The notes beneath the pieces were generated by a model. It saw only the letters and a program-made list of their open reading frames with translations, made no database searches and was not told the origin of the DNA. DNA of 64,000 nt from Laetmonice hystrix (lineage: Eukaryota). This document shows positions 8,554 through 62,748 of the stretch, piece by piece. Position 1 is the stretch's first letter. Every line of letters starts with the position of its first letter. Location of the stretch: positions 2,728,001-2,792,000 of the forward strand of contig OZ249439.1 in NCBI GenBank assembly GCA_965235115.1, in the 5' to 3' direction. The position numbers were made by a program, and so were the translations under genes.

Positions 8554-8989
8554 TGGCACGTTGCTGAAGTCTGTGTTTGTGTGTTTGTGTGTAGGACCGG
8601 CGTGGCCCGTTCATACCGTTGCTGAAGTCTGTGTCTGTGTTTTTGTGTGTAGGACCGGCGTGGCACGTTCATACCGTTGCTGAAGCCTGTGTTTGTGTGT
8701 AGGACCGGCGTGGCACGTTCATACCGTTGCTGAAGTATGTGTTTGTGTGTTTGTGTGTAGGACCGGCGTGGCACGTTCATACCGTTGCTGAAGTCTGTGT
8801 TTGTGTGTAGGACCGGCGTGGCACGTTCATACCGTTGCTGAAGTCTGTGTTTGTGTGTAGGACCGGCGTGGCACGTTCATACCGTTGCTGAAGTCTGTGT
8901 GTTTGTGCGTAGGACCGGCGTGGCACGTTCATACCGTTGCTGAAGTCTGTGTGTTTGTGTGTAGGACCGGCGTGGCACGTTCATACCGT
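8554..8989 (+). repeat. 50-56-bp array spanning a splice acceptor, 8 copies
   Basis: gtgtgtag|gaccggcgtggcacgttcataccgt; the last copy is the start of exon 8965. Confidence 0.92.
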
Positions 8990-9072
8990 GGGTGGCGTGG
9001 ACGGTAGTCGTTATGTTCTACGAGGGCCTGGCTGTCATCCTCTATTTCTCCGCCTCCAAACACAAGCAAAAG
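8965..9072 (+). CDS. 4-TM gene 1 (LAPTM4/DUF7027-like), TM3 exon
   Basis: tgtgtgtag|GAC...AAG|gtacgt; 108 nt, phase 0-0; DRRGTFIPWVAWTVVVMFYEGLAVILYFSASKHKQK; aligns with the gene 2 exon DNKWLFGMWLVQTVV. Confidence 0.85.
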
Positions 9073-9334
9073 GTACGTACACAATTAGTGCTGACTTGTA
9101 AATGATATCGAATCCTTGCTGTGCTCTCACCCGTTTTATGTCTTTATAGCGAGTATAAAATTGTCGGCAAAGCGGCGACCTTTCATTCATTCACTCGGCG
9201 ACAAACGAAAACGAAAATGCCATTTCACATGTGGGATGTGTCGACATTATGGTTGGCATGACATCACAGCCGGCGTGATGAGCCGACTCGCACGCACCAC
9301 TAGTGTTCTCCTCATTAAAACGGTTGTTACATAT

Positions 9335-10754: not shown

Positions 10755-10817
10755 GGAAGTCCGAGGGAAAGGGTTGGCACATTATTGCAGAGGGGGGTTT
10801 GAGGGTTAAGGGCAATG

Positions 10818-11612: not shown

Positions 11613-11647
11613 TTAATGACCCACTTATGTGTTTTTCTCTCTCTCAG

Positions 11648-14246: not shown

Positions 14247-17200
14247 CCTTATTTTGACCTGTCTATTTTCTGTTACAGATCTATTGTCTGATCCCCTTAT
14301 TTTGACCTGTCTATTTTCTGTTACAGATCTATTGTCTGATCCCCTTATTTTGACCTGTCTATTTTCTGTTACAGATCTATTGTCTGATCCCCTTATTTTG
14401 ACCTGTCTATTTTCTGTTACAGATCTATTATCTGATCCCCTTATTTTGACCTGTCTATTTTCTGTTACAGATCTATTGTCTGATCCCCTTATTTTGACCT
14501 GTCTATTTTCTGTTACAGATCTATTGTCTGATCCCCTTATTCTGACCTGTCTATTTTCTGTTACAGATCTATTGTCTGATCCCCTTATTTTGATATGTTT
14601 ATTACTGTTACAGATCTATTGTCTGATCCCCTTATTTTGATATGTTTATTACTGTTACAGATCTATTGTCTGATCCCTTTATTTTGACCTGTCTATTTTC
14701 TGTTTCAGATCTATTGTCTGATCCCCTTATTTTGATATGTTTATTACTGTTACAGATCTATTGTCTGATCCCCTTATTTTGATATGTTTATTACTGTTAC
14801 AGATCTATTGTCTGATCCCCTTATTTTGATATGTTTATTACTGTTACAGATCTATTGTCTGATCCCCTTATTTTGATATGTTTATTACTGTTTCAGATCT
14901 ATTGTCTGATCCCCTTATTTTGATATGTTTATTACTGTTACAGATCTATTGTCTGATCCCCTTATTTTGATATGTTTATTACTGTTACAGATCTATTGTC
15001 TGATCCCCTTATTTTGATATGTTTATTACTGTTACAGATCTATTGTCTGATCCCCTTATTTTGACCTGTCTATTTTCTGTTACAGATCTATTGTCTGATC
15101 CCCTTATTTTGATATGTTTATTACTGTTACAGATCTATTGTCTGATCCCCTTATTTTGATATGTTTATTTCTGTTACAGATCTATTGTCTGATCCCTTTA
15201 TTTTGATATGTTTATTACTGTTACAGATCTATTGTCTGATCCCCTTATTTTGATATGTTTATTACTGTTACAGATCTATTGTCTGATCCCCTTATTTTGA
15301 TATGTTTATTACTGTTACAGATCTATTGTCTGATCCCCTTATTTTGATATGTTTATTTCTGTTACAGATCTATTGTCTGATCCCTTTATTTTGATATGCC
15401 TATTTTCTGTTACAGATCTATTGTCTGATCCCCTTATTTTGACCTGTCTATTTTCTGTTACAGATTTATTGTCTGATCCCCTTATTTTGATATGCCTATT
15501 TTCTGTTACAGATCTATTATCTGATCCCCTTATTTTGACCTGTCTATTTTCTGTTACAGATTTATTGTCTGATCCCCTTATTTTGATATGCCTATTTTCT
15601 GTTACAGATCTATTGTCTGATCCCCTTATTTTGATATGTTTATTACTGTTACAGATCTATTGTCTGATCCCCTTATTTTGACCTGTCTATTTTCTGTTAC
15701 AGATCTATTGTCTGATCCCCTTATTTTGATATGTTTATTACTGTTACAGATCTATTGTCTGATCCCCTTATTTTGATATGTTTATTACTGTTACAGATCT
15801 ATTGTCTGATCCCTTTATTTTGATATGTTTATTACTGTTTCAGATCTATTGTCTGATCCCCTTATTTTGACCTGTCTATTTTCTGTTACAGATCTATTGT
15901 CTGATCCTCTTATTTTGATATGTTTATTACTGTTACAGATCTATTGTCTGATCCCCTTATTTTGACCTGTCTATTTTCTGTTACAGATCTATTGTCTGAT
16001 CCCCTTATTTTGACCTGTCTATTTGCTGTTAGAGATCGATTGTCTGGTCCCCTTATTTTGACCTGCCTATTTTCTGTTACAGATCTATTGTCTGATCCCC
16101 TTATTTTGACCTGTCTATTTGCTGTTACAGATCTATTGTCTGATCCCTTTATTTTGATATGTTTATTACTGTTACAGATCTATTGTCTGATCCCCTTATT
16201 TTGACCTGTCTATTTTCTGTTACAGATCTATTGTCTGATCCCCTTATTTTGACCTGTCTATTTTCTGTTACAGATCTATTGTCTGATCCCCTTATTTTGA
16301 CCTGTCTATTTTCTGTTACAGATCTATTGTCTGATCCCCTTATTTTGATATGTTTATTACTGTTACAGATCTATTGTCTGATCCCCTTATTTTGATATGT
16401 TTATTACTGTTACAGATCTATTGTCTGATCCCCTTCTTTTGATATGTTTATTACTGTTACAGATCTATTGTCTGATCGCCTTATTTTTGATATGTTTATT
16501 ACTGTTACATATCTATTGTCTGAACCCCTTATTTTGATATGTTTATTTTCTGTTACAGATCTATTGTCTGATCCCATTATTTTGATATGTTTATTACTGT
16601 TACATATCTATTGTCTGATCCCCTTATTTTGATATGTTTATTTTCTGTTACAGATCTATTGTCTGATCCCCTTATTTTGACCTGTCTATTTTCTGTTTCA
16701 GATCTATTGTCTGATCCCCTTATTTTGACCTGTCTATTTTCTGTTTCAGATCTATTGTCTGATCCCCTTATTTTGATATGTTTATTACTGTTACAGATCT
16801 ATTGTCTGATCCCTTTATTTTGATATGTTTATTACTGTTACAGATCTATTGTCTGATCCCTTTATTTTGATATGTTTATTACTGTTACAGATCTATTGTC
16901 TGATCCCTTTATTTTGACCTGTCTATTTTCTGTTACAGATCTATTGTCTGATCCCCTTATTTTGACCTGTCTATTTTCTGTTACAGATCTATTGTCTGAT
17001 CCCCTTATTTTGACCTGTCTATTTTCTGTTTCAGATCTATTGTCTGATCCCCTTATTTTGATATGTTTATTTCTGTTACAGATCTATTGTCTGATCCCCT
17101 TATTTTGATATGTTTATTTTCTGTTACAGATCTATTGTCTGATCCCCTTATTTTGACCTGCCTATTTTCTGTTACAGATCTATTGTCTGATCCCCTTATT

Positions 17201-18843
17201 TTGACCTGCCTATTTTCTGTTACAGATCTATTGTCTGATCCCCTTATTTTGACCTGTCTATTTTCTGTTACAGATCTATTGTCTGATCCCCTTATTTTGA
17301 TATGTTTATTACTGTTACAGATCTATTGTCTGATCCCCTTATTTTGATATGTTTATTACTGTTACAGATCTATTGTCTGATCCCCTTATTTTGATATGTT
17401 TATTACTGTTACAGATCTATTGTCTGATCCCCTTATTTTGATATGTTTATTACTGTTACAGATCTATTGTCTGATCCCCTTATTTTGATATGTTTATTAC
17501 TGTTACAGATCTATTGTCTAATCCCCTTATTTTGACCTGTCTATTTTCTGTTACATATCTATTGTCTGATCCCCTTATTTTGATATGTTTATTACTGTTA
17601 CAGATCTATTGTCTGATCCCTTTATTTTGACCTGTCTATTTTCTGTTACAGATCTATTGTCTGATCCCCTTATTTTGACCTGTCTATTTTCTGTTACAGA
17701 TCTATTGTCTGATCCCCTTATTTTGACCTGTCTATTTTCTGTTTCAGATCTATTGTCTGATCCCCTTATTTTGATATGTTTATTTCTGTTACAGATCTAT
17801 TGTCTGATCCCCTTATTTTGATATGTTTATTTTCTGTTACAGATCTATTGTCTGATCCCCTTATTTTGACCTGCCTATTTTCTGTTACAGATCTATTGTC
17901 TGATCCCCTTATTTTGACCTGCCTATTTTCTGTTACAGATCTATTGTCTGATCCCCTTATTTTGACCTGTCTATTTTCTGTTACAGATCTATTGTCTGAT
18001 CCCCTTATTTTGATATGTTTATTACTGTTACAGATCTATTGTCTGATCCCCTTATTTTGATATGTTTATTACTGTTACAGATCTATTGTCTGATCCCCTT
18101 ATTTTGACCTGCCCATTTTCTGTTACAGATCTATTGTCTGATCCCCTTATTTTGACCTGTCTATTTTCTGTTACAGATCTATTGTCTGATCCCCTTATTT
18201 TGACCTGCCCATTTTCTGTTACAGATCTATTGTCTAATCCCCTTATTTTGACCTGTCTATTTTCTGTTACAGATCTATTGTCTGATCCCTTTATTTTGAT
18301 ATGTTTATTTCTGTTACAGATCTATTGTCTGATCCCCTTATTTTGACCTGCCCATTTTCTGTTACAGATCTATTGTCTGATCCCCTTATTTTGACCTGTC
18401 TATTTTCTGTTACAGATCTATTGTCTGATCCCCTTATTTTGACCTGTCTATTTTCTGTTACAGATCTATTGTCTGATCCCCTTATTTTGACCTGTCTATT
18501 TTCTGTTACAGATCTATTGTCTGATCCCCTTATTTTGATATGTTTATTACTGTTACAGATCTATTGTCTGATCCCCTTATTTTGACCTGTCTATTTTCTG
18601 TTACAGATCTATTGTCTGATCCTCTTATTTTGATATGTTTATTACTGTTACAGATCTATTGTCTGATCCCCTTATTTTGACCTGTCTATTTTCTGTTACA
18701 GATCTATTGTCTGATCCCCTTATTTTGATATGTTTATTTCTGTTACAGATCTATTGTCTGATCCCCTTATTTTGACCTGTCTATTTTCTGTTACAGATCT
18801 ATTGTCTGATCCCCTTATTTTGATGTGTTTATTTCTGTTTCAG
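14247..18843 (+). repeat. 47/48-bp array spanning a splice acceptor, ~97 copies
   Basis: ttattttgacctgtctattttctgttacag|atctattgtctgatcccc and a 47-bp variant; ends at the acceptor of exon 18844. Confidence 0.95.
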
Positions 18844-18939
18844 ATTTATTGCCTTATATGTCTGACCTGTCGGTACCGAGCCCTCCGCCCTGCCATGCAG
18901 GAGACGCCGTGTACATATGTCTTTCCAAGCCCCGAGCAG
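18844..18939 (+). CDS. 4-TM gene 1, end of TM4 exon
   Basis: tttctgtttcag|ATT...CAG|gtcagt; 96 nt, phase 0-0; IYCLICLTCRYRALRPAMQETPCTYVFPSPEQ; matches gene 2 AYCVLCVVSQLQAL. Confidence 0.8.
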
Positions 18940-19664: not shown

Positions 19665-19774
19665 TAGGACTTAGAGAGTCGACGTTGTATAATGTTGTCT
19701 AAAGCAATCTTTATAACGTAGGCTTAAGCAGTTGTGACTTCGTTTATAATATTTGGCTCGTTCTACTTGCACAG

Positions 19775-40504: not shown

Positions 40505-40995
40505 TTGACCTTCGTGGCAGATTGAAGGTCGAACAGTCGATCGGTTTGACCTTCGTGGCAGATTGAAGTTCGAACAGTCGATCGGTTTGACCTTCGTGGC
40601 AGATTGAAGGCCGAACAGTCGATCGGTTTGACCGTCGTGGCAGATTGAAGGTCGAACAGTCGATCGGTTTGACCTTCGTGGCAGATTGAAGGGCGAACAG
40701 TCGACCGGTTTGACCTTCGTGGCAGATTGAAGGGCGAACAGTCGATCGGTTTGACCTTCGTGGCAGATTGAAGGGCGAACAGTCGATCGGTTTGACCTTC
40801 GTGGCAGATTGAAGGGCGAACAGTCGATCGGTTTGACCTTCGTGGCAGATTGAAGGGCGAACAGTCGACCGGTTTGACCTTCGTGGCAGATTGAAGGGCG
40901 AACAGTCGATCGGTTTGACCTTCGTGGCAGATTGAAGGGCGAACAGTCGACCGGTTTGACCGTCGTGGCAGATTGAAGGTAGAACTGTCGACCAG
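40505..40995. repeat. 41-bp VNTR, 12 copies (2 copies in unit B at 53866-53945)
   Basis: gtggcagattgaagggcgaacagtcgatcggtttgaccttc. Confidence 0.93.
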
Positions 40996-42235: not shown

Positions 42236-42513
42236 ATTATGCTGTTATTAGGAGAAGAGGGGTGGCGGCTGTGTGGTTTCAGACAGTAAATCATTATGCT
42301 GTTAGGGGGAAGAGGGGTGGTGGCTGTGTGGTTTCAGACAGTAAATCATTATGCTGTTAGGGGGAAGAGGGGTGGTGGCTGTGTGGTTTCAGACAGTAAA
42401 TCATTATGCTGTTATTAGGGGAAGAGGGGTGGTGGCTGTGTGGTTTCAGACAGTAAATCATTATGCTGTTATTAGGAGAAGAGGGGTGGTGGCTGTGTGG
42501 TTTCAGACAGTAA
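42236..42513. repeat. 55-58-bp VNTR, 5 copies (1 copy in unit B)
   Basis: attatgctgttattaggagaagaggggtggtggctgtgtggtttcagacagtaaatc. Confidence 0.9.
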
Positions 42514-44233: not shown

Positions 44234-44264
<31 letters not shown>

Positions 44265-44488
44265 TATTTTATTTTTTTTATTTTGTCGTATTTAGCTTAT
44301 ACTGTAAACTTCTCATTGGCTTTTAACGTTTTGCCACCGGCTACAAAAGGATGTCAGCAACCATTAGGATCTCTCAGCGATGACTGTATAATTTCCTAAT
44401 TATTTATACGTTTTGTTTACTCATCCCCCCGTCCGGCACTCCCTAAATCAATCGTAATGTCTCTCGTTTCTCCACCTAATCTTCAGAA

Positions 44489-47259
44489 ATGTTGGCGGCA
44501 GTGGTAGCAGTTGTCGGTCTCCTCCTCATCTACCTGGCCCTCCATAAGCCGAGACCCAAGTTACCGCCAGGACCACCTGGGCTACCAATCTTGGGAAACA
44601 CTCACCAGCTCGACAAGAAAGCTCCCTATCTGACGATCACAGAATGGAGTGAGAAATATGGGAATGTTTTCACGTTTAAGAACTTCACTCAGAATGTCGT
44701 GGTTCTGAACGACTATAAGACGATTCATGAAGCACTGGTGGTTCGCTCCAGTGATTTCGCAGGTCGTGCCCCCAACTACCGTGCCTCGACGATGTTCAAG
44801 TACTGCTCAGACATCGTCTTCGCGGACTTCACACCCAAGTGGATCTACACCAAGAAACTGTCCATGACATCACTCAAGTCGTACGGGGATGGGCTCGCGA
44901 ACCTAGAGGAAATCTCACGGGATTTGATCTCCGACATGCTAAAGGACCTCGAGAAAAAGGCTGGTCATGGGACGCCGGTAGACATGAAGAGTACGGTCCA
45001 CGCGTGTACTGGAGGAATTGTTTCCTCCGTGGTGAGTTTGACCGTGGAGGAGTGAGTCAAGGAGGAGTGGCAATTTTCCGAAATTCTGACTTTACCTGTC
45101 ATCCTAATTGTTAAAGACCACATCGACAAAAAGCAATGATATCATTGGTCTCCCCTGGTTGCCCCCTCCAGCTCCACCTCTGTAACTTACTGAAGTGAAA
45201 AGGCGATGAACTGGCCGATTCCGATATGTCTTGATTTGATACATATTTTTCCCCCTTCATCAAACAAACTCCACATTGTTACATACTTTTCCCTCCAGCT
45301 CTGGGTATACAAACTCCACATTGGTACATACTTTTTCCTCCAGCTCTGGGGTCACAAACTCAAACCGGAGGAGCTCCGTGCCATCCTGGACGTTGAGAGA
45401 CTTTCATTGGAGTTCCTCGACCCAAACGGCCGTGCAGGAGAACTTGAAATGTTTCCATTTTTGCGATATTTGCCATCACAGAACAAGAAATTATTGTATG
45501 CAGTCCGAGATGCTTTTCATAACTGCTATCCAGCCAAGAATGAGGAGTCGAGGGTAGGCTTATGTTTTGTTGGATTATCTGTATATGTTTGTTTTTTGGT
45601 AGCTTTTTTTCACTGTATTTTAAAATGTCCCGCAAACTTATATCACGTATAGTGTAATAAGTCTGACCTTGGGAGAATTGTCGTCAATGTCATTATGAGA
45701 TATGAGAGTTGCAATGTCAGCTCTGTTCGTTCAGGCTCAGTGTGATGGCCGAGAGCCAGCTTGTATGATGGAGGCAATCATCACCCAGCAACAACGGGAG
45801 GTGAAGGAGAAAGGTCAACCGGTGCTAACTAAAGGTGATGTGGACGCCGTCAGCATAAACGTGATCGAGGCCGGTACGTACTGTGATGTCAGTGTGACGT
45901 CACGTCACACTTATCTTCTGCCAATGCTGCCTGTTCGAACTTTTTTGTAGTGCCCTTTTTGACCAGCAAGTGCCCTTTTAAATTGACGCTGTTTTTTTAT
46001 CGCCTGGCAAATGCCCCTCGTGAGCTCGCTTCAATAGTAGTTCCTATCCCTGTGCTTCCCTGGCCTAAAACAGTTAACGAGGAGATCACGTAATAAGAAA
46101 TTTGAAGAATGTGATTCAATGTTTCCGTAGGAACCTTAACCACCTCGACGACGATGAGTATCCTGACTGCAGTCTTGGTAAACAAACCTGAGATTCAGAC
46201 GAGGATGAGATCCGACATTCAAACAGTGATCGGGAACCGTTTACCCCGACTCAAGGACAGGTCATCTCTGCCGTACGTGGAGGCGTCCATCCTGGAGTCT
46301 CTCCGCTACTCGTCCATCCTTCCACTACTCATCCCGCACACTGCGACCACAGACACGACCATGGATGGATACGATATACCCAAGGGAACGATGGTATACA
46401 CCAACACAACCAGACCACTCTGAATCATAGCGCTAAGTTTCAACCAATAAAAAGTCTTGTATGAAAACGAGGCATTCAGCGACATGTTTTTTCAAAAGGG
46501 AAATGATTTTTCAGTGCGTGCTATCTTTAGATTGTTACGCGTAAAATTGTCCTTGCGTCTTGTAGTCTGATGCGTTTTATGTAGTACAGTTTCCGGCGAT
46601 GTGTCACGTAATATAAGCCATGTATGTGACCGCCAGGTGATGGTCAATGCCTGGAAACTCCACCACAGTGAGAAATACTGGGACGAGCCATGGGAGTTCC
46701 GTCCGGAGAGATTTCTGTCTGATGATGGCACACTGGTTCCTCCAGATCATATCAACAGGAAGAGGTAGGCAGGAAGTGGCCATAGATTTATTTTTTCACC
46801 GTGTAAAATTTTCCGTGCGATTTAAGGTGAAGTTGTACCAGGTTTATCTGTACCAGAGAGGATGACTCGAGGAACCATTCCATTTCCAATTACATGTATA
46901 TGTCTATTTGGAGATTACAAGAGCCTTAGCCAGAGAATCTGATGTGTTTTTTTATGTCTTTCTGAAGCGGCCTGACATGAATTCCTGGAGAGAATAACAT
47001 TACCGTTATAGCTGTGATGAGCGTCGTATAATCGGTTGTAATCTTCAGGTTGATGCCGTTTGGTGCCGGGAGACGGGTGTGTCTAGGCGAGGTGCTGGCC
47101 AGGAATCGTCTCTTCCTGCTTCTGGTCGCCATCATTCAGAGGTTTGTGATCCACCCGGAGTCGGAGGACAAGTTACCCGACTATGACCCCCGTGGGTACG
47201 ACACGGGGCTAGTTATCGCCCCCAAACCTTTCAACGTTCGACTTGTAACCATCGACTAG
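44489..47259 (+). CDS. Cytochrome P450, clan 2 (CYP17/CYP1-like), copy A, 497 aa
   Basis: Exons 44489-45031, 45344-45553, 45735-45873, 46131-46393, 46637-46764, 47049-47259; all GT-AG with consistent phases. Has an N-terminal TM anchor, PPGP hinge, I-helix AGTLTT, ESLR (ExxR), FRPERF and heme motif FGAGRRVCLG. Confidence 0.95.
45264..45361 (+). repeat. 45-bp acceptor-spanning repeat before CYP-A exon 2 (2 acceptors)
   Basis: ttttccctccag|ctctggg at 45299 and 45344. Confidence 0.88.
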
Positions 47260-48869
47260 CAAACTACCATCTTCTCTACCTGCTGACTAAAGCAGAGATT
47301 TCGTGTCGAGGAGAACTTCATATTATTCAGAGGACTTATTCCTTATAGAGGCTAATCTCGAGTATGCTGTAATGTTAAGAAAAAATGTTCTAACTCCCTG
47401 TGAGGCTACAGGCAGAGACGATGTATGACGACGATAAGTCTTCGTACTACATTAACGTCGTTTACCTACTACATTTTATAATTCTCATATCTACCAGATG
47501 GCTTTGATACATATCTTTTCTACATTGAACATGTCAACTTGACGAAGTCTGCACTGTATTAAACTGACATAATCACATTATAAACTGAGACAAGACGACC
47601 AGTTTTTCGACATTTTCCAGGAGCGTGAATACCCTGCTTGAGCTATGTTTGGGAGTAGAGGTTGCAATCGCAATGGGTTTCCCAGGTTTGTTTTGGTGGG
47701 AGACAACTCTACAGTGATCTGGAAAAACCTAGCAAGTCCACTTTGCCTCATTTTCAGAAAACTGGGACAAACAAACCATTCCTCCCATTGAGGTGATGCA
47801 AACGCTAGTTTTTTTTCAGGTCAATAACTATGAATTGTGTAGAGTTTTGATCACTTGTATAGGACTATATGAAAGGACAAAACCTAGTTAGTCCAAAAAT
47901 GAGACTAACTCAAATTGGGCAAAAACTCGACTTACTAGGTTTTTTCAAACTTTCGCCATTATAATGCGCTGCGGTTCGCTTCGTTTCCATTCACACTTGC
48001 GTCAAATTGCGAACTGAAGCGAAGCGTATTCTGGAATTGACGTCGGGTATTCGCTTCTAAAACGCATGAAATCGCTTCAATGCGCATTGGACCTCTAGTG
48101 AATGGTACGGATTCTGGAATGCACATCAATGCGCTTTAAAGCGCATTCTGGGGTCTAGTGTGAAAAGGACATTGGAGGGCGACAGGCGGGCGTCTTGACC
48201 CGCAACGAAAAGGAATGTCGGTCTGAATCGTTTTTTTTCAATTTGTTGTTTTGTTTAGAAAACGAATGTTCATCACTCTTAACGTTCACCGCGTAAAAGT
48301 GGAAAATTAAATACGACTCCAATAATAGAAGCGGTATATACGTAAGCCCTCCCAAGTACCCAATAAAAGTCCACTGTACAGTATGAGTGTTTTTATTAAT
48401 AATTGACCATATTTATCCAACTCCACCGCCTTGTTTTCTTTAGTAAACGACTTAGGATTCTATACCGATACAATCAGGTTTCAGATTAAAGCTTCGTGTT
48501 AGTGTGATTGCTAACATGAGCCCCTGAACTGTCTTGAATTTATCACCGTCACCCGTCACGTGACGTCGGACACTCAATGTCACATGATGTATGTTCAAGG
48601 TCATTGTAAGAAACATTGACCTGTGTCGACGGTTGTGACATCCAGAATGAAGGAACTGTTTCAGCATTGGTCGGATACTATACTACAGTCTGCCATATGG
48701 AGATTTAAACAGATCTCTATTTTCGGAATACCACTCAGCAGCGGGAGATCTCTTGCCTGTTAGGGTCAGCGTGTGGAACCCAATACATTTAGTGTGACTT
48801 CTGACGGTGCCACCACCTGCAAAACAGCTAAGTGAAGCCCCTATTCTCTATGAACTGGAGACACTAATA

Positions 48870-49248: not shown

Positions 49249-49292
49249 AGTGTTTATTTGATTACAATAATTGTAAGTTACACACTATAATT

Positions 49293-49946: not shown

Positions 49947-50160
49947 GATTACCAACCTCATAGCTCCTGCTTCTTATCCAGTACTATGTCTACTCTACAA
50001 GATTGCTGTTTGTCATTATCACACTTATCATCATCAGTATTCATCCACTTTCACATAGGTCGATTGAGCTTACCTAAGTTTGGTACGATGTCATCGAAGC
50101 AATATTGGTTACTGCTACTGTTGTATATAGCTGTGTTGATACCTCTTACAATTTTATCAT

Positions 50161-53010: not shown

Positions 53011-54448
53011 CACCGTGTTACGTGAGTGGTATATAGCTTCGATGTACAAATACAAATATACAGTTTGTATCCGCAGAATAATTATATGGAGTTTGAAATT
53101 TTACCATCTCATTCCATCATTATTTCATTTTCAACAATGATCTTGGATTCCAGCGAAGGTAGCCGTATTCTCTATGTATTATCTGTAGTGTGATTTAGTG
53201 GGAGGGGGTGGAAGACCAGTCATTGACTGAACCCCAATTCCCAAAATAAAAATTATCAAAAAAAAAAAAAAAAAAAAATTATTTTCACCATGTACTTACC
53301 CAGGACCAGGTGAACTGTCTCGGCACTGGCTGATTATCTCGCACAAAGTGTATCTTTCTTATTATAGGAGTATATCCTATTTAAATACGTATCCTAAAAT
53401 GTCTTGTTTATATCTTCTTCACACATATTTATGGACCTACGATAGCATTCTGTGCAGATCTACGCAAATCCTAGGTTGTATTAGGGAGTAATTCGAATGA
53501 AGTCTTATAAAACTGTGACGTGAACACATCACCAGACATGAGAATAATAATTATTGTCATCACCTACATACACGACTTTTGTCTTCTTCTTCCTACATTT
53601 CTTTACAGTTTATTGAGGATTATTTATTGATTATTTATTTATTCACACCAGAATTATTGGTTACACTGTGAAATGAAGATTCGTTCAAGCCAATGACTCA
53701 GACGACCCACTGAATATCCGAGCAAAAACGGTTAGGGCAACAGATCATCGTTGTGGTACAAGCTCATTTTTAAATCATACACATAGGATTTCAGCCCAGG
53801 GAACGAGGACAACCATCACGCGTTTTAACAGTTATTTAACGTCGGAGGTTTAACACGTACAGTAATTGACCTTCGTGGCAGATTGAAGGGCGAACAGTCG
53901 ATCGGTTTGACCTTCGTGGCAGATTGAAGGTAGAACTGTCGACCTGTTTGACAAATAAACGACAACACGAGTTCTCTGGTGACTGGTGACAAGTCACAGT
54001 CATTAGTTATAGTCTTGTTATCATCAGTGATATCACGTCAGGCGAGATTTGTTGAGGCAGAGTTTACTTGTCTCATTCCGACCTATATGGGTCTGATCTC
54101 TGCCTATAAAGGACAGAGTATTGTGGCGCAGATTTCGAAGGAGGGACAAGAGTTTGTGTTTAACAAACGATACAGGTAAGTGTTGACGTTCATATCGTAA
54201 TCCAGGTACGGAAATGATGCCATTCAGCAGATAAAGTGGATTTACATTCAGATCAAAGTTCCAGGTGAGTTTAGACAGTTTGCTTTGTTTCGATATCCAA
54301 TTAGTTACCCTCCCCCATTTTTATAATGATTTTGATGGTATACCTCTCTGGGTGCTCCACCCAAGGAGTTGGGTTTTGCGCTCGCACCTGTTGGAAATGG
54401 TCAAAGAGGACGCACTCGCGTAGTGCTGACCAGGCGAACGAGTCACTC

Positions 54449-54757
54449 AATTTTTTTATTTTTAATTTTGTTGACGTTTACGTGATCCCACCTATCATGG
54501 AAATAGATTCACAACAAAGGAAATTAAAATTGTTCAAGGATAACGGCACAAATGAGGCTCTCTCAGAAGGCCTGTGGAGACCCTGGCACGCCCCACCATA
54601 GGAAATGGCTCTATCTCGGTGCGCACCGAGATAGGTTTCAAATACTGCACACAAACTAATAGAAGGTTTATCAGGCCAATGGTATCGGTAGGAATCTGTT
54701 CTAGTACTATGTGCACAATGTATGATAGGAGAAATGCCATTTTGTGCGAGACGAATA
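54449..54757 (-). mobile_element. Unit-B-specific ~310-bp insertion, probably an antisense retroposed fragment
   Basis: Absent at the matching unit A site (~41597); T-rich left end could be a minus-strand A tail; 24-bp perfect palindrome at 54611-54634. Confidence 0.5.
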
Positions 54758-55259
54758 GCACCTTTAACTGACAGTCGTCATGTCTCGGCTGTATGGCGGA
54801 GGTCGCCATGTAATCCAACATGTAACGGGGTGAGAGCGGTGTAGGTCTCTGTAAGAAAAGCACGAAACGCGATGTTTTGCAAGGACTCTAAGAGATAATT
54901 CCTACCACGAACGTTGGATGAACCCTCGGTGGATCTGGTCATATGGCGCTTTTGGTGATGAGTGCTGTAGATCAGTGGTTTTTGTGTCACATTTGAGGTG
55001 GGATCCCTGTGAGTTTTGGTTTACGCTTCCATGACCAGGGACTAGGACTCACATTGTACAGCGTAGTACTGGATCATGCGCTTGTAGGAATTGATCTCAC
55101 TTCATTGGACTTCACCCTGCCCAGGTATGTTGGCTGAAAACGCCACCCCGAATGTACTACAGGTACCCGCCCAAGCTTGGCGTCGCCCATCTACGACGAA
55201 GATTAATAAAAAGAAGGTAACTGAGTTGAAGGACACTTTGAAATCAGTATTAGGGTGAA

Positions 55260-55952
55260 TTGTCTGCCTACAAGCCTGGTGAAGGGCAGGCTCCGGAAAC
55301 TGGCAGGAATGTCGCTGAGATGCTGGACATGATATTGTTGGAGGTACGGGCCCTTCGTGCTGAGAGGGACGGAATGGTGGTGGAGGTGAACCAGCTAAAG
55401 AAAGCGCAGAAGTATTTTCAGGAGCACCAGGTGAAGATGACGGACACTCTCTCGCAGCAACAGAGATTCTTAGAAGAGATTAACGCACGTGACCGTGCCA
55501 GAAATGTTGTCATTACTGGCCTCAGTGAATCAGAGCCACTTGGAGTCGCAGAGTCAGACGACGCAAAATGCGGATGTATTCTGGAGGTAGTGGGTTGTGC
55601 TGGGATGCCTGTGACGTGCTAGCGTGTGGGGAAGAAGAAGGAGGGGCAGCATCGACCGCTTATCGTGAAGACCCCTTCGGCCGACGAAAGAGAGAGGATC
55701 CTATCTAATACTGCCAGGCTTAAGGACGCAGGAGGGATATACAGGAGGGTATTTGTGAAAAAAGATGTCCACCCAGCTGTGAGGCGAGAGTGGTTGCGCC
55801 TGACAAACGCAGAGAAAGCTGAGAAGGAGAAGCCTGAGAATGTGGGATGCAATATCAGACTGGACACCCAACGACGGGTTTTGATGCGTGATGATGTCAT
55901 TATAGATGGATGGTCTCCATCGTATTTCCAGCCAAAGGTCCAAAGCAACTAA
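55260..55952 (+). pseudogene. Disrupted LINE ORF1 (in-frame TAG at 55620-55622)
   Basis: ORFs 55260-55622 and 55626-55952 share a frame; coiled-coil region followed by RVGKKKEGQHRPLIVK...RVFVKKD, typical of LINE ORF1 C-termini. Confidence 0.7.
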
Positions 55953-56896
55953 AAATTGGATACTGGAATTTAAGAGGGATTAGGAAGAAGATCGAGTCCA
56001 ATGTTGCACTGGAATGGATTATGCAGCATGACTTGGTGTGCCTAAGTGAGACATGGTCTGATAAACCCTTTCATGTACCCGGTTTTGATGTCAGACATAG
56101 CAGGAATACGAGCATAAATCGTGGTGGCGTAGCTCTACTGATAAGGTATTATTTGGTTAATTTTGTGACATACGTTGACACACAGTCTCAGGACCACGTG
56201 TGGTGGAGATTGTCGTTTTTGCCTAATGTTTTGTTCTGTGGTTGTTATGTGCCACCCTCAGACTTATGCTATTATAATGACGATGTGTTAGCTGGAATAC
56301 AAGGTCGATGCCCTGATAAAGACCCTGATTATTTTGTTATCGGAAGTGACCTTAATGCCAGATGTGGGGCAGCAGTGAACAGTTTGGTGAGTGATAAGCC
56401 CTTACTCTCATATGAAGGTATCCAGGTTAATATTCCTCGCCCGAATAACACTGGTAAGAAACTTCTGCAGTTGTGCAAAGATTGTGATATATTAATATTG
56501 AATCATCTTAAAGTAAGCAATTCGCATTTCCAAGGTGCCCTGTCATTCCACAGAAGATCCAATTGGATTTCGGAGTTGGATTTGTGTTTGATGTCAAATG
56601 ATATTGTCAATTCAGTGTCTTACTTTAAGGTAGATCAAAGACTGTGCTTCCCATCAGATCATGCGCCTGTTTCTGTGTGGTTTTGTGTGGACGCTCTCGG
56701 TCCTGGCGATATTGGGGCTCTCACTGCCCGCTCGCGTATGCTCGGCCAGCAGTGTGTTCCCTCCCAGCAATTAAAGTCAGGGTGTAAACGTCCTGTGAGG
56801 TACTCTCAGATTGACCAAGATCAATTTATATATCAATTGGCCCAGTGTGATATACCGAATATGTGCGATAGCGGTGGTGAAACAATGGTAGGTCTT
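55910..56896 (+). pseudogene. Truncated LINE ORF2: AP endonuclease domain only
   Basis: IGYWNLRG, CLSETW, GGVALL, YVPP, SDLNAR, NNTGKKLL and SDHAP; homology is cut where the sequence rejoins unit A at 56897. Confidence 0.8.
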
Positions 56897-57353
56897 CCAG
56901 TTGAAGAAGAGACTGTTTTGTCTCCACTGTAGAAAATTCGAGAAGGATACAGGTCTAGGTATGTTAAGAAATGAGATTTGAACTAGGCCTAGATCTATGT
57001 GCCTGTGCTTTGGGGAAATTCGACCATTTACTGCTCCTCTGTTCATGCGCGATGCCGCTTCAGGGGGTTTAGCACAAATCCTGGGGAATTGACCGCTTAC
57101 ATATGAAGCCTGGTTCGCCTCCGGATATGACCTAGAAACAGCCACTCAGAAGCAGCGTCGGTGTTCCGACTGGCGCACGAGTGTGAAAGATGAAATCGCT
57201 CGCTCGCGTCCTGGAGAAATCCCGCATAATGAGACTATTACAGAGGGGAAGTCCACTAGACAGCATGACATCAGCTGCCAGGAATAGAAAGGAGCGCCTT
57301 GCTGCAATTTGGCACTGTGTTCGTTTTGTAGCTATTAACAGCATGCCCTATAA

Positions 57354-57703
57354 AGGCCTGTACCCACTAGTGCGTTTTACCGCTGCGGTATGTGGAAAAT
57401 CGCGACGCACGACGCAGAGATTGGTACAACTGAATTTCATAGAATGGTTTCCATTTGAGCGATGCGGCAAAAATACCTGATTGACCCTGCCGCGGCCGAC
57501 GCACAGCGGAAAAAGCCGTTGAAAAAATAGCATTTGAAGCGATTAACCGCGGCGGGACGTGACACCTGAAAGGGAGTGAATGATGACCGGTATGCGTTTT
57601 TCTGCCTCAGTGGGAACAGGTTACCTAATCAGGGCCGCCGCGATTTCCCGTCGCGGGAAATCGCGGCGTTTGTGTCTGAGTGACAAAACGCCCTAGTGGG
57701 TCT
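57354..57703. mobile_element. MITE (PIF/Harbinger-like), unit B only
   Basis: TIR acccactag(t/g)gcgtttt; flanks TAA-AGG...TCT-TTA; empty site gccctaTTAtg in unit A at 42231. Confidence 0.75.
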
Positions 57704-58817
57704 TTATGATGTTAGGGGGAAGAGGGGTGGTGGCTGTGTGGTTTCAGACAGTAAATCCTGCCTACTATTCCTGCCTTGCTGGATCGTCATGCACTAGAAA
57801 CACTAAAAAGACAAAATGTTAACAGGACCTGTAATACTAAACTTCCAAAGAAAAACAATTCTAACCTCACAACACACAATCCTTTAGGCCTACAAACAAC
57901 ATCTTCACCTAACAAGGATATTTCAAAACAACCACAGATCTCCCTACTCTAATTAGGTCATTTCGCCACACTAGTGCGTATCGAGACTTTTGTCAAGAGC
58001 CCAAGACATGTTTTTGTAGGGGACACGTTCAGTCAGTGCTTTTGCATTATCCTTCGAGTTTCCAGGGCAGTGTGGCAGTGCCTTGGAATGGATTCTGTTT
58101 CTACGGGCTTGTTTAGGCCTGCACCAGGCTTTTTCAGGTCTAACGGTGGGTCATTATATAGGACGGTCAATACACGATCCGGTAATTACCCAATATCATC
58201 CAACGCATCAACACGTTCTCCTTTAAAAATAGATATGATTCAAAATAACACTTGAAGGGAGTGTGGCGACCCTGACTATGGATGTCAGGGTCTGCGGGCA
58301 CAGGCTCCGTGTACGTATAACTTACTTCTCGTTGTGTTCCTAGAGATCATACCTGAATTGGGGATCGAGACGGTGTGGCTGGAGTGGGGGATAATGGACT
58401 TAAGGTCTTAAGTATAGGCAGAAGGAAAGTGATACGCAAAACAGTATTATGGATGATATAGACAATATTATATTCAGCACTTTATGGTTCCTAACCCGTT
58501 GTGGTTGGCGAGTTACCTGACCATGTGTGTGTATTACAAGAGAAAACTTACTAATGGATACTTACCAAAACACGGATGGGGAGGGATGCATGGGTTGTGG
58601 AGAACGCCACTCCTTTGGAAGGCGAGTAAGTCACACCAAACACACACCGCCGAGCAGCAGGGTCAATCTGGCGCAGGAGATACAGCACTGGGTAAGAAGG
58701 CCCGGCAGGGATCTATCAGTCGCCAGCCGCAGCCGGCCCAGATATGCCAGAATGCGCTTCTTTGCCGCTGGACTTGGACGAATCTCTAGAAGAACCAGTG
58801 CTGCCAACTGCGCTTAA

Positions 58818-59283
58818 AGGCCTGTGACCACTTGAGCGGTATGCCGCGCGTCTTAACGCCGCGTGATACGCACAGTGAAACACGCGGCGGAATACGCGGC
58901 GGCAATGCTTGTCCACTTTGGCGTGAAATTGCAGGCGCATACGGTCACTGATCATCATATCTTATCATATAGGCTTGGGTTTTTCTCCACTTCTGTGATC
59001 AGATATGCTCAGTTGTTCGGTCGTCCGCCTTTCGAGACATCTTGGTGAATGGCCAGGTGCAATTCAGTGCCAACGCTTCACAAAACACGCGGCTTAATAC
59101 GCGCAATAAATAGATTTTCTTTACCGAGCGTATCACGTGGCGGTGGGAGTGCGTGTTTTTTTGCCGCCATGCTCAGGTGGACACTCCTGCATTGGAATCT
59201 GTTGTTCTTTTACTAGGCGTTTTACCGCCGCGTATCATGCGGCGTTATGACGCGCGGCATACCGCTCAAGTGGACACAGGCCT
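58818..59283. mobile_element. MITE with 54-bp TIRs (PIF/Harbinger- or Kolobok-like), unit B only
   Basis: aggcctgtgaccacttgagcggtatgccgcgcg... and its reverse complement differ at 3 of 54 positions; empty site gcgctTAAtgctg in unit A at 43565. Confidence 0.88.
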
Positions 59284-60020
59284 TTATGCTGCTCCCACGT
59301 CTGCTGCTCGACTGCTGCTCGGGCGGGGGTGGTGTTGGCTGCCGTCCCATTGGAGAGGGTGGATCACTCTCGCCGATTCCAAGCCGTGCAGCCGGTCTTA
59401 AGGAAGGGCTGCAGCCAATAGGAATGGTGACCAATAGGAAATGTCCCCAACCCTGGCACTTCAAAGGGTGGCCAACAGGAGATCAGATCTCCAGGAGTGG
59501 TTGAAGACTGACGTCCCAGCCCTCGCCACGCAGTGGCCACGCCCACACACGGACGGTCTGGACGCTGCGGGTGGGAGTGGGCACTCCCACGGTCACCAAG
59601 GCCAAAATACTGACATACAAAGTTTGGAATAAAATACACTTACTTACTAACGGTTCCGGATACCGTATACTGTATACTTGGGACGAAAGCTGGACTAGAG
59701 GTACGTGTATATATTGTACGTGATAGCTTGGCGCCTAGTGATTTTAATAGGCACGTATAGACAGCAGTTATATAACAGTTCTACTGAGGTTGTCACAAGT
59801 TTCATTTTTTTATTTTGTCGTATTTAGCTTACTGTAAACTTCTCATTGGCTTTTAACGTTTTGCCACCGGCTACAAAAGGATGTCAGCAACCATTAGGAT
59901 CTCGCAGCGATGACTGTATAATTTCCTAATTATTTATACGTTTTGTTTACCCCCCCCCCCCCATCCGGCACTCCCTAAATCAATCGTAATGTCTCTCGTT
60001 TCTCCAGCTAACCTTCAGAA

Positions 60021-62748
60021 ATGTTGGCGGCAGTGGTAGCAGTTGTCGGTCTCCTCCTCATCTACCTGGCCCTCCGTAAGCCGAGACCCAAGTTGCCGCC
60101 AGGACCACCTGGGCTACCAATCTTGGGAAACACTCACCAGCTCGACAAGAAAGCTCCCTATCTGACGATCACAGAATGGAGTGAGAAATATGGGGATGTT
60201 TTCACGTTTAAGAACTTCACTCAGAATGTCGTGGTTCTGAACGACTATAAGACGATTCATGAAGCACTGGTGGTTCGCTCCAGTGATTTCGCAGGTCGTG
60301 CCCCCAACTACCGTGCCTCGACAATTTTCAAGTACTGCTCAGACATCGTCTTCGCGGACTTCACACCCAAGTGGATCTACACCAAGAAACTGTCCATGAC
60401 ATCGCTCAAGTCGTACGGGGATGGGCTCGCAAACCTAGAGGAAATCTCACTGGATTTGATCTCCGACATGCTGAAGGAACTGGAGAAAAAGGCTGGTCAT
60501 GGGACGCCAGTAGACATGAAGAGTACGGTCCACGCGTGTACTGGAGGAATTGTTTCCTCCGTGGTGAGTCTGACCATGGAGGAGTTAGTCAAGTCAACCC
60601 CAAGGGAAGCCCAAATAGTGTTTACTGCCTTGGCAATTTTCCGAAATTCTGACTTTACTTGTCATCTTAATTCTTAAAGACCACATCGACAAAAAGGAAT
60701 GATATCATTGGTCTCCCCTGGTTGCCCCCCCCCCCCCAGCTCCACCTCTGTAACTTACTGAAGTGAAAAGGCGATGAACTGACCGATTCCAATATGTCTT
60801 TGGGTATACAAACTCCACATTGTTACATACTTTTCCTCCAGCTCTGGGTATACAAACTCCACATTGTTACATACTTTTCCCTCCAGCTCTGGGTATACAA
60901 ACTCCACATTGTTACATACTTTTCCCTCCAGCTCTGGGGTCACAAACTCAAGCCGGAGGAGCTCCGTGTCATCCTCGACGTTGAGAGACTTTCCCTGGAG
61001 TTCCTAGACCCAAACGGCCGTGCAGGAGAACTTGAAATGTTTCCATTTTTGCGATATTTGCCATCACAGAACAAGAAATTATTATATGCCGTTCGAGATG
61101 CTTTTCATAAGTGCCACCCAGCCAAGAATGAGCAGTCGAGGGTAGGCTTATGTTTTGTTGGATTATCCCTATGTTTTTGGTAGCTTTTTTCACTATATTT
61201 TAAAATGTCCCACAAACTTACATTACGTATAATGTAATATAAGTCTGACCTTGGGAGAATTGTCGTCAATGTCATTACGAGATATGAGAGCAATGTCAGC
61301 TGTGTTCGTTCAGGCTCAGTGTGACGGACGAGAGCCAGTTTGTATGATGGAAGCGATCATCGCACAGCAACAACGGGGGATGATGGATAAAGGTCAACCG
61401 GTGCTAACTAAAGGTGATGTGGACGCCATCAGCATAAACGTGATCGAGGCAGGTACGTACTGTGACGTCAGTGTGACGTCACGTCACTTGCCGTCACGTC
61501 ACTCATTCAGTGGAAGGTGCACATGTAGGTCCGGAGTGATCTTTTTGACCAGCAAGTGCCCTTTTAAATTGACGCTGTTTTTATATCGCCTGACAAATGC
61601 CCATCGGGAGCTCTCTTCAATAGTAATTCCTATCGCTAAAACAGTTAGCGAGGAGATCACGTAATAAGAAATTTGAAGAATGTGATTCAATGTTTCCGTA
61701 GGAACCATGACCACCTCGACGACGATGAGTGTCCTGACTGCGGTCTTGGTAAACAAACCTGAGATTCAGACGAGGATGAGATCCGACATTCAAACAGTGA
61801 TCGGAAACCGTCTACCCCGACTCAAGGACAGGTCATCTCTGCCGTACGTGGAGGCGTCCATCCTGGAGTCTCTCCGCTACTCGTCCATCCTTCCACTACT
61901 CATCCCGCACACTGCGACCACAGACACGACCATGGATGGATACGATATACCCAAGGGAACGATGGTATACACCAACACAACCAGACCACTCTGAATCATA
62001 GCGCTAAGTTTCAACCAATAAAAAGTCTTGTATGAAAACGAGGCATTCAGCGACATGTTTTTTCAAAAGGGAAATGATTTTTCAGTGCGTGCTATCTTTA
62101 GATTGTTACGCGTAAAATTGTCCTTGCGTCTTGTAGTCTGATGCGTTTTATGTAGTACAGTTTCCGGCGATGTGTCACGTAATATAAGCCATGTATGTGA
62201 CCGCCAGGTGATGGTCAATGCCTGGAAACTCCACCACAGTGAGAAATACTGGGACGAGCCATGGGAGTTCCGTCCGGAGAGATTTCTGTCTGATGATGGC
62301 ACACTGGTTCCTCCAGATCATATCAACAGGAAGAGGTAGGCAGGAAGTGGCCATAGATTTATTTTTTCACCGTGTAAAATTTTCCATGCGATTTAAGGTG
62401 AAGTTGTACCAGGTTTATCTGTACCAGAGAGGATGACTCGAGGAACCATTCCATTTCCAATTACATGTATATGTCTATTTGGAGATTCCAAGAGCCTTAG
62501 CTGTGATGAGCGTCGTATAATCGGTTGTAATCTTCAGGTTGATGCCGTTTGGTGCCGGGAGACGGGTGTGTCTAGGCGAGGTGCTGGCCAGGAATCGTCT
62601 CTTCCTGCTTCTGGTCGCCATCATACAGAGGTTTGTGATCCACCCGGAGTCGGAGGACAAGTTACCCGACTGTGACCCCCGTGGGTACGACACGGGCCTA
62701 GTTATCGCCCCCAAACCCTTCAACGTTCGACTTGTAACCATCGACTAG
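60021..62748 (+). CDS. Cytochrome P450, clan 2 (CYP17/CYP1-like), copy B, 497 aa
   Basis: Exons 60021-60563, 60932-61141, 61314-61452, 61702-61964, 62208-62335, 62538-62748; exon lengths identical to copy A and the same motifs (AGTMTT, ESLR, PERF, FGAGRRVCLG). Confidence 0.95.
60800..60949 (+). repeat. 45-bp acceptor-spanning repeat before CYP-B exon 2 (3 acceptors)
   Basis: Acceptors at 60842, 60887 and 60932. Confidence 0.9.

What the first reader, a model, noticed from the sequence alone, without database searches (positions are those of the whole stretch)
8554..60949. Recurrent mechanism: tandem amplification centred on intron-exon acceptor junctions in unrelated genes
Seen: three unrelated units (50 bp at 8.6 kb, 47/48 bp at 14-19 kb, 45 bp at 45.3 and 60.8 kb) each consist of acceptor plus exon start, and only the 3'-most copy continues into the exon. 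Inference: either pyrimidine-tract junctions are slippage or recombination hotspots and the decoys are tolerated, or this lineage favours the last acceptor of a run. I know of no description of this as a system, but cannot search the literature.
Basis: partly seen in the sequence, partly recalled or inferred. Interest (0 to 1): 0.8.

Follow-up and report, generated by a model that had tools for sequence, protein, structure and literature searches.

The report
Minisatellites that copy splice junctions ("mirages")
Three intron minisatellites in this window really do repeat a splice acceptor plus the first bases of the exon. This is the known "mirage" kind of boundary-spanning repeat, it hits splice donors just as often in this genome, and it is no commoner than the very high repeat density predicts.

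Summary
Three unrelated arrays have units made of an intron 3' end plus an exon start: 50-58 bp x8 at 8.6 kb, 47/48 bp x97 at 14.2-18.9 kb, and 45 bp at 45.3 and 60.8 kb. Only the last copy joins the exon, which is simple geometry. The 45.3 and 60.8 kb arrays are one event, inherited by at least four tandem P450 paralogues.

A spliced RNA contig joins P450 exon 1 to the last acceptor (60932) and skips both decoys.

The acceptor-specific mechanism is not supported:
- I verified donor-type arrays in the same genome: a DEAD_2 helicase exon, an Ig exon and a P450 exon 3.
- In a sample chosen only by Pfam domain (88 acceptors, 93 donors) I found 1 acceptor event and 2 donor events.

The phenomenon is already described: "mirages" in amphioxus (Adh3, globins, TnC, PGBD5) and the human F7 intron 7 VNTR. 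New here are the lineage (a spiralian, not a chordate) and the scale (96 decoy acceptors).

Earlier follow-ups of this scan reached the same reading on other DNA of this genome. It is a tolerated by-product of a minisatellite-rich genome and a useful natural test of splice-site choice.

The parts
8554..8964 (+). Array 1: a truncated 5' copy (8554-8594), then 7 full decoy units of 50-58 bp. Each unit is 25 nt of exon start (GACCGGCGTGGCACGTTCATACCGT) plus TGCTGAAGTC plus a TG-rich tract ending in TAG.
   Evidence: TRF; copy listing. Unit length varies with the TG tract. The units are not multiples of 3, so use of one decoy would shift the frame.
8965..9072 (+). Exon A, 36 codons (DRRGTFIPWVAW...SKHKQK), donor GTACGT at 9073.
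   Evidence: P0121 of another species is 81% identical over residues 1-36, and the similarity is bounded by the predicted splice sites. Weak MARVEL match, E 0.004, below cut-off. No paralogue in the genome.
14247..18843 (+). Array 2: 96 decoy units of 47 or 48 bp, partly alternating as a 95-bp higher-order repeat. Each unit has a TTGAT/TTGAC branch-like site, a pyrimidine tract, CAG and the exon-like start ATCTATTG.
   Evidence: TRF. Among 93 split segments (3 of them double units), 90 end in AG and 3 in AT, and 92 of 93 carry an in-frame stop (I-Y-C-L-I-P-L-F-stop).
18844..18939 (+). Putative exon B, 32 codons (IYCLICLTCRYRAL...PSPEQ), donor GTCAGT.
   Evidence: Open frame with AG and GT signals. 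Four differences from the decoy exon part are all synonymous third positions. No homologue found, so exon status is inferred.
44489..45031 (+). P450 copy 1, exon 1 (181 codons), donor GTGAGT at 45032.
   Evidence: PF00067 E 4.7e-21; sequence.
45264..45343 (+). Array 3, copy 1: one intact decoy unit (exon-like start at 45299) plus the real intron end. A decayed older copy lies just upstream (about 45233-45263). The unit is 25 nt of intron (GTTAC at -18, pyrimidine tract, CAG) plus about 20 nt of exon start, bracketed by the 8-nt direct repeat ACAAACTC.
   Evidence: TRF. The 45-nt unit is in frame and stop-free (LWVYKLHIGTYFFLQ).
45344..45553 (+). P450 copy 1, exon 2 (70 codons, LWGHKLKPEEL...).
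   Evidence: tblastn map. The exon 1/exon 2 join (VSSV-LWGHKL) fits the usual P450 ...ICSI-VFGKRF region; that comparison is from my own knowledge of P450 sequences, not a tool result.
60801..60931 (+). Array 3, copy 2: two decoy units (exon-like starts at 60842 and 60887) plus the real intron end.
   Evidence: TRF.
60932..61141 (+). P450 copy 2, exon 2. Its start is the acceptor actually used in RNA.
   Evidence: Spliced contig of run X4: joint 60563 to 60932, GT..AG, skipping 368 nt. The DNA run X1 has no such joint.
39879..48526 (+). Segmental duplication, first copy. It pairs with 53278-64000 at 88-99% identity and carries P450 copy 1.
   Evidence: blastn of the window against itself. Further copies lie at C4:2.795-2.826 Mb.
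53278..64000 (+). Segmental duplication, second copy, carrying P450 copy 2.

Best explanation
These are boundary-spanning minisatellites ('mirages'). In a genome where about 30% of this window is minisatellite, short tandem duplications of 45-60 bp arise almost anywhere, probably by replication slippage or unequal exchange between short direct repeats.

When the duplicated piece straddles an intron/exon junction, the result has a fixed shape. For an acceptor, all copies but the last lie in the intron as decoys. For a donor, all copies but the first do. One intact exon always remains.

Such arrays survive, and expand by unequal crossing-over, because the spliceosome keeps pairing the exon-proximal site: the last acceptor or the first donor. 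Most mis-spliced products would carry a frameshift or stop and be degraded.

The arrays are tolerated by-products, not devices, and acceptors are not a preferred target.

Shown: the anatomy, both junction types, a frequency equal to chance placement, and use of the last acceptor in the P450 RNA.
Inferred: slippage as the birth step, exon definition as the reason the proximal site wins, and decay of mis-spliced RNA.
For: Anatomy and repeat density:
- Arrays and unit anatomy.
- Minisatellites cover 31% of the window, and the one-unit 'edge zone' of all arrays is 2.3% of it.

Signs of ordinary minisatellite birth and turnover:
- The 8-nt direct repeat ACAAACTC brackets the 45-bp unit.
- Array 2 has a 95-bp higher-order structure.
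- Copy number differs among paralogues (2.2, 3.3, 2.7, 3.3), and the oldest copy has decayed, with CAG changed to CAT in L031.

Donor-type arrays verified in the same genome:
- L033: 66 bp x10.3, made of the last 40 nt of a DEAD_2 exon plus GTAAC and intron.
- L038: 65 bp x3, made of the last 25 nt of an Ig exon plus GTGGGC and intron.
- L017 and L021: the exon 3 donor is repeated.

Unbiased sample: 88 acceptors and 93 donors gave 1 and 2 independent events, against 1.64 and 1.84 expected under random placement.

Splicing: the RNA contig splices exon 1 to the last acceptor.

Literature:
- Mirages span both 5' and 3' boundaries and do not disturb splicing (PMC3087553; PMC3902484).
- In F7 IVS7 only the most upstream of identical donors is used (PMC1557585).
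Against: - The unbiased sample is small: three events in all. A two-fold acceptor or donor bias could not be seen.
- Three independent acceptor events in one 64-kb window is more than the roughly 0.5-0.7 expected for 20-30 acceptors (P about 0.01-0.03, my estimate). The window was picked after the fact from several hundred.
- RNA evidence is one assembled contig at one locus. It is 97.7% alike, so it may come from a near paralogue or allele, and contigs cannot exclude minor decoy use.
- Exon B is not independently verified.
- Slippage at microhomology is inferred from sequence only.
Confidence: 0.8

Rival explanations
1. Acceptor junctions are mutational hotspots. Pyrimidine tracts promote slippage or recombination, so arrays arise preferentially at 3' splice sites.
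For: Three independent acceptor-type arrays and no recognised donor-type array in this window. Array 1 has a TG-microsatellite-like tract whose length varies between copies.
Against: - Donor-type arrays without any pyrimidine tract are at least as frequent in the unbiased sample: 2 donor events against 1 acceptor event.
- 26 of the 29 larger arrays in the window have no recognised link to an acceptor (the window's exon map is incomplete).
- Observed counts match random placement.
- Earlier notes of this scan list many donor arrays in this genome. These are unverified leads, of which I checked one.
Confidence: 0.08
2. The decoy arrays are functional. They might tune splicing efficiency or kinetics, act as a sink for U2AF/U2, or in the P450 genes supply in-frame alternative acceptors that add 15 or 30 residues.
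For: The 45-nt P450 decoys are in frame and stop-free, and the array is retained in all four paralogues examined.
Against: - The assembled transcript uses only the last acceptor.
- The oldest decoy has lost its AG in one paralogue type, and copy number drifts between paralogues.
- A 15-residue insert would fall inside a conserved P450 core segment (my own knowledge of P450 structure).
- Units of arrays 1 and 2 shift the frame or carry stops.
- Frequency equals chance placement.
Confidence: 0.07
3. Assembly artefact: the arrays, or their copy numbers, are errors of assembling repetitive reads.
For: Long arrays of near-identical 48-bp units are hard to size. The window holds an assembly gap at 27971-28169.
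Against: - The 45-bp array recurs with its own variants in four separately assembled paralogues.
- Contigs of DNA run X1 (same sample as the assembly, so not independent) cover the P450 copy 2 region.
- Variant units form an ordered higher-order pattern.
- The same architecture is documented and re-sequenced in amphioxus (PMC3902484).
- Only the exact copy number of array 2 is open to doubt.
Confidence: 0.03

Closest known systems
[quoted passage not shown] 2002; PMC3087553; PMC3902484)
   Same: The tandem unit is part intron and part exon and includes the splice site. They occur in unrelated genes. Copy number is unstable. Many copies keep AG/GT signals. Regular splicing is undisturbed. BflGb6 is exactly the acceptor type: 3' end of the intron plus 5' part of exon 2.
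   Different: The lineage is different: the nearest named relatives of this genome's proteins are annelid, nemertean, mollusc and brachiopod at 60-65% identity. Units here are shorter than the globin ones (45-58 bp against 150-160 bp). One array is far longer, with 96 decoys against 3-6. Allelic or somatic instability was not tested here.
Human F7 intron 7 37-bp VNTR (PMC1557585)
   Same: A minisatellite whose boundary element spans an exon/intron junction, so the authentic splice site is followed by identical pseudo-sites that stay silent. The exon-proximal site is chosen.
   Different: F7 is donor-type. The window's arrays are the mirror image at acceptors, while L033 and L038 in this genome are the direct counterparts. 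The selection rule has been tested by mutagenesis for F7 only.
Intron creation from tandem arrays or internal duplications (Rogers 1989; Zhuo et al. 2007; Gao and Lynch 2009; human internal tandem repeats in segmental duplications, PMC2812944)
   Same: Tandem repeats that carry splice signals and lie at exon/intron boundaries can remodel gene structure.
   Different: No new intron or exon is seen here. All extra copies lie inside a pre-existing intron, and the mRNA is unchanged at the one locus tested.
NAGNAG tandem acceptors
   Same: Adjacent duplicated acceptor AGs with a choice between them.
   Different: NAGNAG sites are 3 nt apart, share one branch point and tract, and are routinely used in alternation. 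Here each unit is 45-58 nt and looks self-contained, with its own tract, AG and a branch-like motif.

Membership tests
Mirage (boundary-spanning minisatellite) | Head-to-tail tandem array of minisatellite-size units | tested here: met
   TRF: periods 45-58 bp, 2.2 to 96.8 copies, 89-96% matches.
Mirage (boundary-spanning minisatellite) | The unit contains both intronic and exonic sequence of one real exon/intron boundary, including the splice signal | tested here: met
   Met for the P450 exon (RNA joint; Pfam; units) and for exon A (cross-species boundaries). For exon B the exon itself is only inferred.
Mirage (boundary-spanning minisatellite) | The authentic site is still used and mRNA splicing is not disturbed | tested here: met
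   Tested at the P450 locus only. The spliced contig joins 60563 to 60932 and skips the decoys at 60842 and 60887. Minor decoy use is not excluded. Arrays 1 and 2 were not tested.
Mirage (boundary-spanning minisatellite) | Length instability (allelic or somatic copy-number variation) | tested here: inconclusive
   Copy number differs among four paralogues (2.2, 3.3, 2.7, 3.3), which shows turnover. Alleles and somatic variation were not examined.
Mirage (boundary-spanning minisatellite) | Occurs at both 5' and 3' exon boundaries | tested here: met
   Acceptor type: the window arrays and L034. Donor type: L033, L038, L017 and L021.
Recursive-splicing (ratchet) sites | A 3' splice site immediately followed by a regenerated 5' splice site (AG|GTAAGT) | tested here: not met
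   Decoy junctions read TAG|GACCGG, CAG|ATCTAT and CAG|CTCTGG, with no GT after the AG.
NAGNAG tandem acceptors | Two acceptor AGs 3 nt apart sharing one branch point and pyrimidine tract | tested here: not met
   Acceptors are 44-58 nt apart, each with its own tract.
   88 acceptors and 93 donors chosen by Pfam only gave 1 and 2 independent events, against 1.64 and 1.84 expected by random placement. The sample is small.

The most novel reading that the evidence does not exclude
The exon-proximal copy may win strictly and genome-wide: the last of up to 97 identical acceptors and the first of many identical donors. That would point to a general, direction-independent rule of splice-site pairing, an acceptor-side counterpart of the oriented scanning shown for F7 donors. 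Such a rule might be especially robust in this lineage and might be what lets it carry such a minisatellite load. A modest acceptor preference in array birth, and occasional use of the in-frame P450 decoys to make proteins 15 or 30 residues longer, are also not excluded by the small sample.
Probability: 0.15. Interest if true: 0.65.

Novelty: new member of a known kind. Interest (0 to 1): 0.35.

Why it matters
Choice among identical, adjacent splice sites is a classic problem. It has been dissected for donors in one human gene (F7) but hardly at all for acceptors.

This genome offers many natural constructs of both kinds, including one with 96 apparently complete decoy acceptors ahead of a putative exon. 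A chromosome-scale assembly and at least one transcriptome run are available.

The finding also shows that mirages are not a cephalochordate oddity. They appear wherever minisatellite birth is frequent. That matters for gene annotation, because decoy sites can mislead gene predictors, and for models of intron gain from tandem duplications.

As a claim of a new acceptor-centred mechanism, it does not hold.

Tried and rejected
RNA and sequencing runs:
- Both run searches listed no run on record as RNA. X4 turned out to be transcriptome-like only when laid.
- Only one read-laying run was allowed, so arrays 1 and 2 have no RNA test.

Gene identity of exons A and B:
- Pfam gave only a sub-threshold MARVEL match for exon A and nothing for exon B or neighbouring open frames.
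- The protein atlas gave nothing usable.
- Neither exon has a paralogue in the genome.
- The open frames at 19703-20254 and 37553-38974, which both carry PPPY motifs, are not significantly similar.
- The word-based protein search found nothing for exon B.
- The relative's contig that carries the exon A homologue could not be read, so presence of the array in that species is unknown.

Genome sampling:
- The fn3 loci could not be cut out for the same reason. This capped the survey at 88 and 93 junctions.

Discarded analyses:
- GA-rich arrays just inside introns of L006 and L012 looked donor-linked by coordinates. They begin 20-30 nt after the donor and are plain simple repeats.
- My motif-based screen for acceptor-type geometry missed known cases and was dropped.

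Literature:
- Canestro et al. 2002 (PMC117041) and Zhuo et al. 2007 (PMC1783408) are not held and are cited only through papers that describe them.
- Searches for work on duplicated 3' splice sites found nothing directly relevant.
Full report
**What is in the sequence**

The window is eukaryotic and extraordinarily rich in minisatellites. TRF lists about 29 larger arrays, or 44 counting short ones, covering 31% of the 64 kb.
- 50-58 bp at 8554-8989.
- 47/48 bp at 14247-18851, 96.8 copies, partly organised as a 95-bp dimer.
- 45 bp at 45264-45361 and 60801-60949.

Splitting the arrays copy by copy shows that every unit ends in a pyrimidine- or TG-rich tract plus AG, followed by the first bases of the downstream open frame.
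- Array 1: 7 full decoys and a truncated first copy. The real exon starts at 8965.
- Array 2: 96 decoys. The real exon starts at 18844.
- Array 3: one decoy at 45299 (real 45344) in copy 1, and decoys at 60842 and 60887 (real 60932) in copy 2.

The assembly gap at 27971-28169 is 9 kb from the nearest of these arrays. Nothing below depends on continuity across it.

**Are the 'exons' exons?**

The 45-bp unit sits in intron 1 of a six-exon cytochrome P450 gene.
- Exon 1 is 44489-45031 (PF00067, E 5e-21). Exon 4 also matches PF00067 (E 3e-27).
- Run X4 was not recorded as RNA but behaves as a transcriptome: 59 M letters and exon-only coverage. It contains a 1,636-nt contig that lies on copy 2 with five intron-sized joints.
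- The first joint runs from 60563 to 60932 with GT..AG ends. That is the last acceptor.
- The DNA run X1 shows no such joints.

Exon A (8965-9072) is supported across species. An exhaustive phmmer search found P0121, a 54-residue product from another species' assembly. It is 81% identical over all 36 residues. The similarity begins exactly at my acceptor (...VFQ|DRRGTF) and ends exactly at my donor (KQK|V).

Exon B (18844-18939) has no homologue or paralogue. Its only support beyond AG and GT is this:
- The decoy version of its first five codons (ATC TAT TGT CTG ATC) differs from the real one (ATT TAT TGC CTT ATA) at four positions.
- All four are third-codon and synonymous.

I treat exon B as probable, not shown.

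**How many events?**

The regions 39.9-48.5 kb and 53.3-64.0 kb are a tandem segmental duplication at 88-99% identity, separated by a non-LTR retrotransposon. The P450 cluster continues beyond the window.

Two further copies that I fetched carry the same 45-bp array in the same phase: L031 with 2.7 copies and L032 with 3.3. So the 45.3 and 60.8 kb arrays are one old event inherited by at least four genes.

Turnover has followed. One gene type keeps two decoys. The other keeps one decoy plus a decayed oldest copy in which CAG has become CAT (L031). The window therefore holds three independent acceptor-type events.

**Why 'only the last copy continues into the exon' says nothing about mechanism**

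A tandem duplication of a segment that straddles an acceptor must leave every copy but the last inside the intron. The mirror holds for donors, where only the first copy is attached. The pattern is geometry.

**Is it acceptor-specific?**

No. I verified donor-type arrays in the same genome.
- L033 (C4:21.50 Mb) is 66 bp x10.3. Its unit is the last 40 nt of an exon (...ACPYYGTRVSIPMAQ; DEAD_2, PF06733, E 8e-7, above cut-off) plus 26 nt of intron starting GTAAC. The first copy is joined to the exon.
- Two unbiased samples followed, both chosen only by Pfam domain.
  - Sample 1: I mapped the six exons of the window's P450 onto all P450 loci returned by the family search. That gave 64 acceptors and 63 donors.
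  - Sample 2: I built an HMM from I-set exons and found 40 exon-limited Ig exons in a titin-like gene and others. That gave 24 acceptors and 30 donors that could be assessed.
- Spanning arrays in these samples were:
  - The P450 exon 2 acceptor: four paralogous junctions, one event.
  - The P450 exon 3 donor in L017 and L021 (ACAA|GTGAGT... repeated): one event.
  - An Ig exon donor in L038: 65 bp x3, the last 25 nt of ...TTCTLTVQ plus GTGGGC and 40 nt of intron.
- The total is 1 acceptor event and 2 donor events.

**Is it more than chance?**

A junction can only sit in the outermost unit of an array. The sum of unit lengths is 2.3% of the window and 1.6-2.5% of the other array-bearing loci.

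Randomly re-placing the same arrays within their loci gives 0.97 + 0.67 = 1.64 spanned acceptors and 0.92 + 0.92 = 1.84 spanned donors. I observed 1 and 2 independent events. Counting the four paralogous acceptor junctions separately gives P = 0.015 for the P450 acceptors, but they are not independent.

For the window itself I estimate 0.5-0.7 expected acceptor events for 20-30 acceptors, against 3 seen. That is P about 0.01-0.03, and the window was flagged after the fact among several hundred scanned.

**How the arrays arise and persist**

This part is inferred from sequence.
- The 45-bp unit is bracketed by an 8-nt direct repeat, ACAAACTC. One copy lies in the intron and one in the exon, where it encodes H-K-L. 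This is the substrate expected for slippage between non-contiguous repeats.
- Array 1 begins and ends in GGCACGTT / GGCGTGG-type repeats. Its unit length varies with a TG tract.
- Array 2 has two unit variants in a higher-order pattern, the signature of unequal exchange.

Each unit looks like a complete 3' splice site: a branch-like TTGAT/TTGAC or GTTAC at about -18 to -24, a tract, and AG. Decoys are barely degraded; in array 2, 90 of 93 split segments (3 of them double units) still end in AG. There is no sign that selection has disarmed them.

Mis-splicing to a decoy would shift the frame in array 1, whose units are 50, 52 or 58 nt. It would meet a stop in array 2 (92 of 93 units). It would insert 15 or 30 in-frame residues in the P450.

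The simplest reason the exon-proximal site wins on both sides is exon definition: the acceptor and donor that flank the intact exon are paired. This is inference. The only experimental precedent I could read is F7, where the most upstream of identical donors is selected (PMC1557585).

**What is known**

I found the literature before consulting the scan's notes.
- Ebner et al. [quoted passage not shown]
  - BflGb6 has the 3' end of an intron plus the 5' part of exon 2, in 3-6 copies.
  - BflGb9 has a 3' exon boundary.
  - They note that both boundaries can be duplicated and that many copies keep AG/GT.
  - They report that RT-PCR shows regular splicing.
  - They note that the term comes from the Adh3 study of Canestro et al. 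2002.
- The PGBD5 paper adds TnC and PGBD5.
- Human internal tandem repeats at exon-intron boundaries are discussed in PMC2812944.
- I found no genome-wide count in the held library.

This genome is not a lancelet. A full-length single-exon P450 from it is closest, among named proteins, to annelid, nemertean, mollusc and brachiopod proteins at 60-65% identity.

Earlier notes of this scan on other DNA of this genome list many acceptor and donor arrays, and one follow-up already called them mirages. I used two of those places as leads and checked them myself.

**Verdict**

The feature is real and the observation accurate. The interpretation as a new acceptor-centred mechanism is not supported.

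It is a new member of a known kind. It is notable for the lineage and for an array of 96 decoy acceptors, and it is useful as a natural experiment on splice-site choice.

Noticed in passing
window 49251-53007 (+): An apparently intact non-LTR retrotransposon sits between the two P450 copies. ORF1 has a weak GDSL/SGNH-lipase-like match. A 956-aa ORF2 has endonuclease (PF14529, PF03372) and reverse transcriptase (PF00078, E 1e-42) domains.
   Followed up: partly
window 39879-48526 and 53278-64000; L031, L032; C4:2.795-2.826 Mb: A tandem cluster of at least six six-exon P450 genes has grown by duplication of a two-gene unit. The two gene types alternate: type A is the 45-kb copy and L031, type B is the 60.8-kb copy and L032.
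   Followed up: partly
window 40505-41001, against 53866-53952, L031 776-862 and 8541-8627, L032 5644-5730: A 41-bp minisatellite upstream of the P450 genes has 12 copies in one paralogous segment and only 2.1 in the four others. This is an expansion private to one copy.
   Followed up: no
window 38260-38525 (+), inside open frame 37553-38974: A 42-bp array is in frame and encodes SRDPTYVRNRELSQ about five times within a 474-codon open frame rich in R, D, S and P, with PPPY motifs. It looks like a coding repeat, not a junction duplication. The frame has no Pfam match.
   Followed up: partly
L023 2454-2558 and L024 2450-2554: A 52-bp x2 duplication overlaps the end of the last P450 exon (tblastn match ends at 2483 and 2479), so it spans the stop-codon region rather than a splice junction.
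   Followed up: no
L034 489-907 (C4:28.78 Mb): An acceptor-type array of 86 bp x5 has a last copy that runs into an open frame (ALFDNESSLYTRTAFRYEIEKHNNG...) ending at a GTAAGT donor near 1031. The geometry is verified, but the exon has no Pfam match on its own.
   Followed up: partly
L006 2566-2756 and L012 2473-2609 (gene orientation): GA-rich simple repeats begin 20-30 nt downstream of the donor of the large P450 exon in two paralogues on C20. They are not junction duplications.
   Followed up: yes
window 1488-3286, 4899-6636, 9361-10754, 23218-25291 and others: Many further long minisatellites (41-70 bp units, 20-44 copies) fill this subtelomere-proximal region, 2.7 Mb from the end of a 40.6-Mb chromosome. 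Their relation to exons on either strand was not resolved for lack of an exon map.
   Followed up: no
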